A stretch of DNA of 64,000 bases from Hypanus sabinus. Taxonomy: Eukaryota. The position numbers and the translations under genes are program-made. This document shows positions 5,960-6,693 of this stretch, piece by piece (the stretch's first letter is position 1; each line of letters opens with the position of its first letter). The stretch spans positions 40,300,001-40,364,000 of the forward strand of contig NC_082706.1 of NCBI RefSeq assembly GCF_030144855.1. Direction: 5' to 3'. The notes beneath the pieces were generated by a model that saw only the letters and a program-made list of their open reading frames with translations, did no database searches and had not been told where the DNA came from.

Positions 5960-6693
5960 TTATTGTTCTATAGAACCTCTCACAGGAGTTGTGAAAGTTG
6001 ATGAATCCCTGAAGACATTCCCACATGTCTGACAAGTTTCAATACAAGTGTGCGATTTCTGCTGGTGAAGATAAGCAAAGCTCCTCCCACATTTGTAACA
6101 TTTATAGGGCCTCTCTCCGGTGTGGGTCCGCTGGTGTTGGGTGCCCTGGCTCTGTGAAACTCTTCCCACATTCGGAACATTTATACGGCCTCTCTCCGGT
6201 GTGGGTCTGCTGGTGTTGGGTGCCCTGGCTCTGTGAAACTCTTCCCACATTCTGAACATTTATACGGCCTCTCTCCGGTGTGGGTCCGCTGGTGTTGGGT
6301 GCCCTGGCTCTGTGAAACTCTTCCCACATTCGGAACATTTATACGGCCTCTCTCCGGTGTGGGTCTGCTGGTGTTGATGAAGGCTCCCTGCCTGTGTGAA
6401 ACTCTATCCACAATCCGGACATTCATGCTGTCCCTCCTTTTTGCCGGCTTGAGGGTAATCTGACTTGGTAAATGCCCTCTTTCTATTGGATAGTGTGAAT
6501 ACATACTGCCTACTTTTGGACACTGGACTCTCACCAGCTTGGTTTACATTGGAGCAAGATAGTTCTCCAGATGATGTTGGTCTGGACGCTGCAGCATGTC
6601 ATCTCAAATGCCGTTTAAGGAAATCTGTTGTGGTAAATGCAATGTTGCATTGAGGGCAAGGGTAACAGTCACTCTGGGTCACTTGATGTAATA
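5960..6693 (-). pseudogene. PRDM9: PRDM9 terminal exon: post-SET finger and C2H2 array, disrupted
   Basis: ttctccag|TA (phase 1) ..YPCPQCNIAFTTTDFLKRHLR*H; linker; [22 protein letters not shown]; three frameshifted [15 protein letters not shown] units; two degenerate terminal fingers; TAA at 5960-5962. Confidence 0.9.
6101..6376 (-). repeat. 79-bp zinc-finger minisatellite, about 3.5 units
   Basis: CTCTCTCCGG anchors at 6111, 6190, 6269 and 6348 (period 79); the units are near-identical. Confidence 0.95.

What the first reader, a model, noticed from the sequence alone, without database searches (positions are those of the whole stretch)
6101..6376. Zinc-finger minisatellite kept expanding after it broke: 79-bp units sharing one 5-bp deletion
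Seen: the period is 79, not 84. Finger 1 reads GGG AGC CTT CAT CAA CAC, while the next three all read GGG CAC C-----CAA CAC, losing the helix Leu(+4)/+5 codons. The units differ at only about two sites (TCC/TCA, CGG/CAG) and are identical at helix positions -1/+3/+6 (E/H/Q). Established: functional PRDM9 arrays turn over by unequal exchange and diversify at the contact residues. Inference: the deletion arose once and was then amplified. This gives a natural neutral control for PRDM9 array mutation dynamics, and the locus may still be a length-polymorphic VNTR.
Basis: partly seen in the sequence, partly recalled or inferred. Interest (0 to 1): 0.72.

Follow-up and report, generated by a model that had tools for sequence, protein, structure and literature searches.

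The report
Frameshifted finger repeats in dead PRDM9
In a ray genome, a broken copy of the recombination gene PRDM9 has three tandem zinc-finger repeats that all carry the same 5-base deletion, so the repeat array went on copying units after the gene died, which is a tidy but expected behaviour of such repeats.

Summary
On the minus strand, 6343-6107 holds three head-to-tail 79-nt C2H2 finger units. An 84-nt first finger (6427-6344) lies upstream and a conserved atypical C-terminal finger (6106-5963) downstream. All three units lack the same 5 nt (TCCAT of CAC-CTC-CAT-CAA, helix +4/+5).

The gene is a PRDM9-type gene (KRAB, PR/SET in three exons, lone finger, array). Its closest proteins are batoid PRDM9-like proteins, especially that of Mobula. 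It is dead: TGA in the lone finger, TAG in finger 1, and a frameshifted SSXRD exon.

Short-read contigs of the same species reproduce the 79-type junctions exactly. Contigs of three related species show 84-type units and AAG instead of TAG. One relative appears to share the TGA.

My reading is one deletion in an already dead copy, spread to three units by unequal exchange or gene conversion. Net expansion is not shown, since live skate arrays have similar unit numbers. Polymorphism is untested. The same species also has a near-identical intact 84-nt unit somewhere, either a paralogue or an allele.

This is an ordinary mechanism and a neat example. The scan holds other notes on this gene in this same window, and none on other DNA.

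The parts
5960..6693 (-). Last (zinc-finger) exon of a PRDM9-type pseudogene. The acceptor AG is at 6695-6694 and the ancestral stop TAA at 5962-5960.
   Evidence: The translation aligns along its whole length with the C-terminal 420 aa of the Mobula hypostoma PRDM9-like protein P0166. Sequence read.
6596..6658 (-). Lone C2H2 finger after the SET domain (CPQC...HLR*H). It has an in-frame TGA at 6601-6599 where Mobula, skate and Narcine have Arg.
   Evidence: (zf-C2H2). Contig X8 rec31 matches the window across this codon (by mismatch bookkeeping).
6344..6427 (-). Finger 1, an 84-nt unit. It has an in-frame TAG at 6406-6404 (Lys in Mobula and skate) and a derived CAG at 6367-6365.
   Evidence: The relatives' contigs read GGG AAG and CGG here.
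6265..6343 (-). 79-nt unit F2 (TCC, CGG). The deletion junction lies between 6298 and 6297.
   Evidence: Exact X1 contigs rec5, rec6 and rec7 cover it.
6186..6264 (-). 79-nt unit F3 (TCA, CAG). The deletion junction lies between 6219 and 6218.
   Evidence: The exact X1 contig rec2 covers it.
6107..6185 (-). 79-nt unit F4 (TCC, CGG, ending CCC). The deletion junction lies between 6140 and 6139.
   Evidence: In relative B the collinear contig rec9 carries a net 5 extra nt across this unit and shares the CCC boundary.
5963..6106 (-). Conserved atypical terminal finger and tail ([32 protein letters not shown]...IEQ). It is out of reach of translation here.
   Evidence: It aligns with the C-termini of Mobula P0166, Narcine P0167 and skate P0005/L001.
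7329..7520 (-). PR/SET exon, C-terminal part (context).
   Evidence: Pfam PF21549 positions 72-122, E = 1.3e-23. tblastn.
9267..9338 (-). PR/SET exon, middle part (context).
   Evidence: Pfam PF21549 positions 50-75. tblastn.
10025..10291 (-). Zinc knuckle plus the N-terminal part of PR/SET (context).
   Evidence: Pfam PF21549 positions 2-51. 86.5% identical to Mobula P0166.
16644..16775 (-). KRAB exon (context).
   Evidence: Pfam KRAB, 24.2 bits against a cutoff of 20.4. tblastn to Narcine P0167.

Best explanation
The stretch is the tandem finger array in the last exon of a dead PRDM9-type gene of a batoid ray. The closest annotated protein is the Mobula PRDM9-like protein.

One 84-nt unit lost 5 nt (TCCAT of CAC-CTC-CAT-CAA, helix +4/+5). 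That defective unit was then copied to or over its neighbours by the ordinary repeat processes of unequal sister-chromatid or homologue exchange, replication slippage or gene conversion. Every internal unit now carries the deletion.

These processes depend on DNA repeat structure and not on coding capacity, so they continued in a gene that no longer makes a finger array.

Shown:
- the three identical junctions
- the PRDM9 identity of the gene
- the stops
- the 84-type units in relatives

Inferred:
- a single origin for the deletion
- the order of events (gene death first, deletion and spread later, in this lineage only)
- the mechanism of spread

Whether the array grew, shrank or kept its length is unknown.
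For: Structure:
- Period 79, with three exact junctions.

Gene identity:
- KRAB, a three-exon PR/SET domain and C2H2 fingers by Pfam.
- The best library proteins are batoid PRDM9-like proteins.
- The exon aligns end to end with Mobula P0166, whose units read ..[18 protein letters not shown]. This defines the lost 5 nt.

Death of the gene:
- TGA at 6601-6599 and TAG at 6406-6404, in place of Arg and Lys.
- The shifted frame hits TAA at each unit junction.
- The SSXRD exon reads in two frames.

Not an artefact:
- X1 contigs of the same species match 6178-6238, 6257-6309, 6288-6331, 6308-6352 and 6347-6800 with no differences.

Lineage-specific and late (all unless stated):
- In relative B, the contig collinear with the 3' flank (rec9) has a net +5 nt across F4.
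- In relative C, all depth at 6297 sits in contigs with +5 nt.
- The relatives read AAG and not TAG.
- Relative D's rec31 has only four mismatches, all at other sites, so it shares the TGA.
- Relative B's rec14 shares three window amino-acid changes away from the Mobula state.

Established knowledge:
- PRDM9 arrays are 84-bp minisatellites subject to unequal crossover and conversion (PMC6116924).
- The skate array L001 has period 84 with 93% matches.
Against: - Copy number (three) is not verified independently. k=31 contigs break inside the repeat.
- X1 may be the sample the assembly came from.
- The relatives' evidence comes from one read-laying output with many rows hidden. The ZNF-rich region attracts paralogous contigs, so assigning contigs to the orthologue or a paralogue rests on identity classes and bookkeeping of depths.
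- The shared TGA is an indirect inference.
- X1 also holds an 84-type contig (rec4, ATGGA inserted at 6297, 3 mismatches) at the same depth as the 79-type branch. An allele or paralogue with intact units therefore exists and could have exchanged sequence with this array.
- The two differences in F3 could be later mutations or a conversion from F1, so the sequence of events is not resolved.
Confidence: 0.78

Rival explanations
1. Inter-locus or inter-allelic exchange. The 79-nt unit, or the homogeneity of the array, owes more to ongoing gene conversion or exchange with a second, intact PRDM9-type array than to turnover within the array. That second array could be a paralogue or the other allele in the same species. 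The dead array would then not be an independent neutral system.
For: - X1 (same species) holds a 99-nt contig identical in its first 45 nt to the 79-type units. It carries the missing ATGGA (plus strand) and 3 mismatches.
- That contig has the same depth (19.6) as the 79-type branch (19.2). Their sum equals the depth of the shared upstream contig (38.7).
- The relatives show two versions of the exon, about 3-5% and about 10-13% from the window. The second ends homology at 5910 with the same loose end in two species.
- Skates have several PRDM9-like genes on one contig.
Against: - The 79-type junction is seen only in this species' data.
- No protein of a second full-length PRDM9 from this species appeared in the word search, though a blank is weak evidence.
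- The location of the 84-type units is unknown.
Confidence: 0.15
2. Assembly or sequencing artefact. The true units are 84 nt, or only one unit is deleted and it was copied by a mis-assembly.
For: - Tandem arrays are prone to collapse or expansion.
- The unit number could not be checked with contigs.
Against: - Five X1 contigs match the 79-type junctions and unit boundaries exactly, including both variant contexts (CGG and CAG).
- The array is only 237 nt, far shorter than any long read.
- A 5-nt non-homopolymer deletion repeated three times is not a known error mode.
Confidence: 0.04
3. Three independent 5-nt deletions at the same site in three units.
For: None beyond the bare possibility. 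The site lies in a C-rich context.
Against: - The junctions are identical and the surrounding 79 nt are nearly identical (0-3 differences).
- No repeat flanks the lost TCCAT that would drive recurrence.
- F1 and the relatives' units keep the 5 nt.
Confidence: 0.01
4. The 79-nt repeats are kept for a function, such as a peptide in another frame or a regulatory or RNA role.
For: A 120-aa open frame crosses the spacer and two units (6543-6184).
Against: - All three frames hit stops within the array.
- The 78-aa frameshift ORF has no relatives in the protein collection.
- The gene carries several independent lesions.
Confidence: 0.02

Closest known systems
PRDM7 and other disrupted PRDM9 paralogues (primates, ruminants, horse)
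   Same: Both are PRDM9-derived copies that keep 84-bp finger repeats but carry stops or frameshifts after the first finger. The disruptive mutations sit at similar sites across species (PMC4874674).
   Different: Here the disrupting lesion is itself part of the repeat unit (79 nt x 3). The host is a cartilaginous fish. Whether this copy is a duplicate or the only copy is not settled.
Canid PRDM9 pseudogene
   Same: Lineage-specific death of PRDM9 through several stops, while close relatives keep the gene (cited in PMC5519329 and PMC4874674).
   Different: I did not find a report of a frameshifted unit spreading through the canid array. The canid case was not tested here.
Tarsier PRDM9 with two frameshifting indels in the array
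   Same: Indels that are not a multiple of 3 lie inside the finger minisatellite of PRDM9 (PMC5048142).
   Different: In tarsiers a second indel restores the frame and the gene is functional. Here nothing restores function: three 5-nt losses sum to 15 nt, but stops intervene.
Live PRDM9 coding minisatellite (human, mouse; skate locus L001 here)
   Same: Head-to-tail finger units, with concerted evolution by unequal crossover and conversion (PMC6116924, PMC3890296). The skate array has period 84, 5.0 copies and 93% matches.
   Different: In live arrays the units differ mainly at DNA-contact codons. In this array the contact codons are identical. The only differences are a third-position Ser codon, an R/Q codon between the two His residues, and a boundary base.

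Membership tests
PRDM9 (KRAB-SSXRD-PR/SET-zinc finger array) | N-terminal KRAB-related domain | tested here: met
   Pfam KRAB, 24.2 bits (cutoff 20.4), on the ORF at 16865-16644. 73% identical to Narcine PRDM9-like.
PRDM9 (KRAB-SSXRD-PR/SET-zinc finger array) | SSXRD motif | tested here: inconclusive
   No Pfam hit. Homology to the Narcine SSXRD region at 14026-13890 is split between two frames, so the motif is recognisable but broken.
PRDM9 (KRAB-SSXRD-PR/SET-zinc finger array) | PR/SET methyltransferase domain preceded by a zinc knuckle | tested here: met
   PF21549 positions 2-51, 50-75 and 72-122 fall on three exons. The knuckle CEACETF..CPVHGPP aligns with batoid PRDM9.
PRDM9 (KRAB-SSXRD-PR/SET-zinc finger array) | Lone C2H2 finger, a spacer, then a tandem 84-bp C2H2 array in one terminal exon | tested here: met
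   The layout aligns residue for residue with Mobula P0166. Three of the four canonical units are 79 nt.
PRDM9 (KRAB-SSXRD-PR/SET-zinc finger array) | Closest relatives are PRDM9 and not PRDM11 or other PRDMs | tested here: met
   The top hits of the full library search and the word search are proteins that NCBI names PRDM9-like or PRDM7-like, from rays and sharks. No tree was built.
PRDM9 (KRAB-SSXRD-PR/SET-zinc finger array) | Open reading frame able to give a protein with a finger array | tested here: not met
   TGA at 6601-6599, TAG at 6406-6404, and a frameshift in each 79-nt unit with TAA in the shifted frame. It is a pseudogene of the family, not a working member.
Minisatellite / VNTR | Tandem head-to-tail units of tens of bp with high identity | tested here: met
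   TRF: period 79, 3.7 copies, 95% matches.
Minisatellite / VNTR | Unit number varies between individuals | not testable with these tools
   Only k=31 contigs were served, and they break inside the repeat. Testing this needs spanning long reads or PCR.

The most novel reading that the evidence does not exclude
The same species carries, at another locus or on the other allele, a near-identical array of intact 84-nt units. If so, this genome offers a matched live/dead pair of PRDM9 minisatellites. The dead 79-nt array is still length-polymorphic and can serve as an in-genome neutral baseline for the mutation and conversion dynamics of the live one.
Probability: 0.3. Interest if true: 0.5.

Novelty: new member of a known kind. 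Interest (0 to 1): 0.33.

Why it matters
It is a clean natural marker experiment. A 5-nt deletion tags one repeat unit, so its presence in every internal unit shows unit copying in a PRDM9 array that was under no selection for DNA binding.

This separates the intrinsic instability of the minisatellite from selection at contact residues. Here the contact codons are uniform, unlike those of live arrays.

It also adds a dated, lineage-specific PRDM9 loss, or loss of one copy, in rays. PRDM9 evolution is poorly described in that group.

The mechanism itself is expected, so the value is as a resource or example. It does not overturn anything.

Tried and rejected
1. Word search with the 78-aa frameshift ORF (6338-6105), to find the 79-type signature in other assemblies. 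It returned only four unrelated bird ZNF fragments. A blank says little.

2. Word search with the Mobula array region, to find an 84-type array from the same species. It was swamped by generic ZNF proteins and was uninformative.

3. Fetching Mobula DNA for a unit-by-unit nucleotide comparison. A skate locus (L001) was used instead.

4. A look-up of earlier findings by sequence gave nothing, and the word PRDM9 finds only this window.

5. I considered that the perfect 111-nt identity at an offset of 158 nt (6108-6218 = 6266-6376) proves a two-unit duplication. I could not derive the observed order A-B-A from one simple exchange. Two point changes in the middle unit (one a CpG transition also seen in F1) or a short conversion from F1 explain it as well, so I make no such claim.

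6. I considered the short last finger as a sign of decay and rejected that reading. It is conserved in Mobula, Narcine and skate.

7. The exons were searched one by one, by reference.

Full report
**Observation**

The window is repeat-rich, 40% G+C and free of N. Tandem Repeats Finder reports one array at 6081-6376: period 79, 3.7 copies, 95% matches, no indels, score 543. Nothing comparable occurs elsewhere in the 64 kb.

On the minus strand the units are as follows:
- F1 is 6427-6344 (84 nt).
- F2 is 6343-6265, F3 is 6264-6186 and F4 is 6185-6107 (79 nt each).
- A shorter last finger runs from 6106 to 5963, with the stop TAA at 5962-5960.

F1 reads GGG AGC CTT CAT CAA CAC. F2 to F4 read GGG CAC C/CAA CAC. 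The junction string CAGGGCACCCAACACCAGC occurs exactly three times, 79 nt apart, with none expected by chance.

F2 and F3 differ at two sites (TCC/TCA and CGG/CAG). F2 and F4 differ only in the last base.

**What the gene is**

Stop-to-stop frames of the minus strand, scanned exon by exon by reference, give these Pfam results:
- a KRAB box (16865-16644)
- one PR/SET domain split over three exons (PF21549 positions 2-51, 50-75 and 72-122, at about 10.3, 9.3 and 7.5 kb)
- C2H2 fingers in the last exon

A full HMMER search with the knuckle/SET exon gave, as nearest proteins, entries that NCBI names PRDM9-like or PRDM7-like from a skate and from sharks. A word search with the skate protein added Mobula hypostoma and Narcine PRDM9-like proteins.

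tblastn of the Mobula protein onto the window aligns all of the following:
- the SET exons (86.5% identity on the largest)
- the lone finger
- the spacer
- finger 1
- the C-terminal tail, down to the last residues (..IEQ)

Three points follow from this alignment:
- The Mobula units read ..[23 protein letters not shown]. The 5 nt missing from the window units are therefore TCCAT of CAC-CTC-CAT-CAA (helix +4/+5).
- The short terminal finger (YKCxxCGxSFAxLHQQKSHTCxETCxTCGNVF..) is shared with Mobula, Narcine and skate. It is ancestral and not a sign of decay.
- By these protein matches the genome is that of a batoid ray. Other agents' notes call it the Atlantic stingray. I did not test that.

**The gene is dead**

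- In the frame fixed by the Mobula alignment there is a TGA at 6601-6599, where Mobula, skate and Narcine have Arg.
- There is a TAG at 6406-6404, where they have Lys.
- After the first deletion the frame runs into TAA at the next unit boundary.
- The SSXRD region (about 14026-13890) is readable only by changing frame.

**Reads**

*Same species.* Runs X1-X4 belong to one organism. X1 gives a 454-nt match with no differences (6347-6800), so it is the same species as the window.

X1 has exact contigs over 6178-6238, 6257-6309, 6288-6331 and 6308-6352. The 79-type junctions and both variant contexts are therefore real sequence and not an assembly slip. X1 may, however, be the sample that was assembled, and k=31 contigs cannot count units.

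X1 also has a 99-nt contig with ATGGA inserted behind 6297 on the plus strand. That is the intact 84-nt version (G H L H Q H), with three mismatches. Its depth (19.6) equals that of the 79-type branch (19.2), and the two add up to the depth of the shared upstream contig (38.7).

An intact, nearly identical unit therefore exists in this species, either in a paralogue or on another allele. Depth calibration is too uncertain to decide which.

*Relatives.* Runs X5, X7 and X8 (three other organisms, 0.24-0.28 of the words) lay contigs of two classes, about 3-5% and about 10-13% from the window.

- The first class is collinear with the 3' flank down to 5800. I take it for the orthologue.
- The second class loses homology at 5910, with the same loose end in X5 and X7. 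I take it for a paralogue.

The evidence from these contigs:
- In X5 the collinear contig (rec9, 384 letters laid on 380) has a net five extra letters across F4, and it shares F4's CCC boundary.
- In X7 the whole depth at 6297 (36.9 = 14.7 + 12 + 10.2) lies in contigs with five extra letters.
- In X8 no contig crosses that junction.
- All three relatives read GGG AAG where the window has GGA TAG, and CGG where F1 has CAG.
- At every non-synonymous difference that I could polarise, the relatives agree with the Mobula protein. These are S/T, Y/D, V/P, N/D, T/A, G/R, stop/K and Q/R. The changes therefore lie on the window's side.
- X5 rec14 (2.8% from the window) shares three of these changes (N, V, Y). 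That suggests relaxed constraint on this copy before the two species split.
- X8 rec31 (6493-6631) has four mismatches, all accounted for at 6501, 6502, 6505 and 6571 by depth bookkeeping. It is therefore identical to the window at the TGA codon.
- In both X5 and X8 the contigs break with a 30-nt overlap at 6602-6631. This is what a two-state site at 6601 would produce.

These last inferences are indirect. Many rows of the output were hidden, and the region attracts contigs from other finger genes.

**Most likely history**

A PRDM9-type copy lost its array from the protein, probably through the TGA shared with relatives. It then accumulated replacements.

In the window's lineage it gained the TAG. 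One unit lost TCCAT, and that unit was then copied over or beside its neighbours until all three internal units carried the deletion.

The spreading steps are what a minisatellite does. Unequal crossover and conversion homogenise PRDM9 fingers, and unit number changes at more than 1e-5 per generation in human sperm (PMC6116924; see also PMC3890296).

A live skate array fetched here (L001) has period 84, 5.0 copies and 93% matches, with differences concentrated in the helix codons. In the dead array the helix codons are identical, and the few differences lie elsewhere.

**What is not shown**

- Net expansion is not shown. Four canonical units plus the tail compares with five plus the tail in skate L001 and eleven plus the tail in Mobula.
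- Duplication with loss cannot be told apart from conversion.
- The order A-B-A, and the 111-nt perfect identity at an offset of 158 nt, do not identify a particular event.
- Polymorphism is untested.

**Comparison with known cases**

Disrupted PRDM9 paralogues that keep 84-bp repeats are known: PRDM7 in primates, ruminants and horse (PMC4874674). Canid PRDM9 pseudogenes are known too.

Frameshifting indels inside a PRDM9 array are known from tarsiers, where a second indel restores the frame (PMC5048142). PRDM9 duplications, and partial copies in cartilaginous fish, were noted by Baker et al. (PMC5519329).

I did not find a report of a frameshifted unit that has taken over a dead array. It is, though, the expected outcome of concerted evolution without selection.

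**Verdict**

This is a new member of a known kind and of modest interest. Interest would rise if a live, near-identical array in the same genome is confirmed.

Noticed in passing
window 13942-13995 (minus strand): The annotated N-terminus of the Mobula PRDM9-like protein (MYQSQNSWDGEAEGVSPI) matches the window at 94% identity, in a frame different from the SSXRD-coding frame of Narcine. The Mobula model therefore starts inside the SSXRD exon out of frame and lacks KRAB and SSXRD. Damage to the N-terminal part may be older than this species.
   Followed up: partly
window 5910 (loose ends in X5 and X7): In the related species a second, roughly 10-13% diverged version of the finger exon loses all similarity to the window at 5910, about 50 nt past the stop. 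The foreign sequence is the same in two species. This looks like the boundary of an old duplication of the PRDM9 3' end.
   Followed up: partly
window 6244-6337 (X1 rec4): Reads of the same species contain an intact 84-nt unit with 3 mismatches to the 79-nt units, at the same depth as the deleted form. Its location, another locus or another allele, is unknown.
   Followed up: partly
window 6403 to 6605 (X7 rec21): One 865-nt contig of relative C joins 6403 to 6605 and so skips the 201-nt spacer between the lone finger and finger 1. It has about 14% mismatches. It may be another finger gene or a PRDM9 relative without the spacer.
   Followed up: no
window 19136-19723, 28352-28810, 33908-34414, 34981-35436 (minus strand): These are open frames of decayed non-LTR retrotransposons. 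Pfam gives PF09004 (a motif common in LINE reverse-transcriptase tails) and weak Exo_endo_phos and RVT_1 hits. They fill the DNA upstream of the gene.
   Followed up: partly
L001 6001-38956 (Rhinoraja longicauda contig): The skate has several PRDM9-like genes, at least four of them on one 10.9-Mb contig and others on small contigs. The L001 copy has an insertion of one codon in its terminal finger (YTCSSVCGKSF).
   Followed up: no
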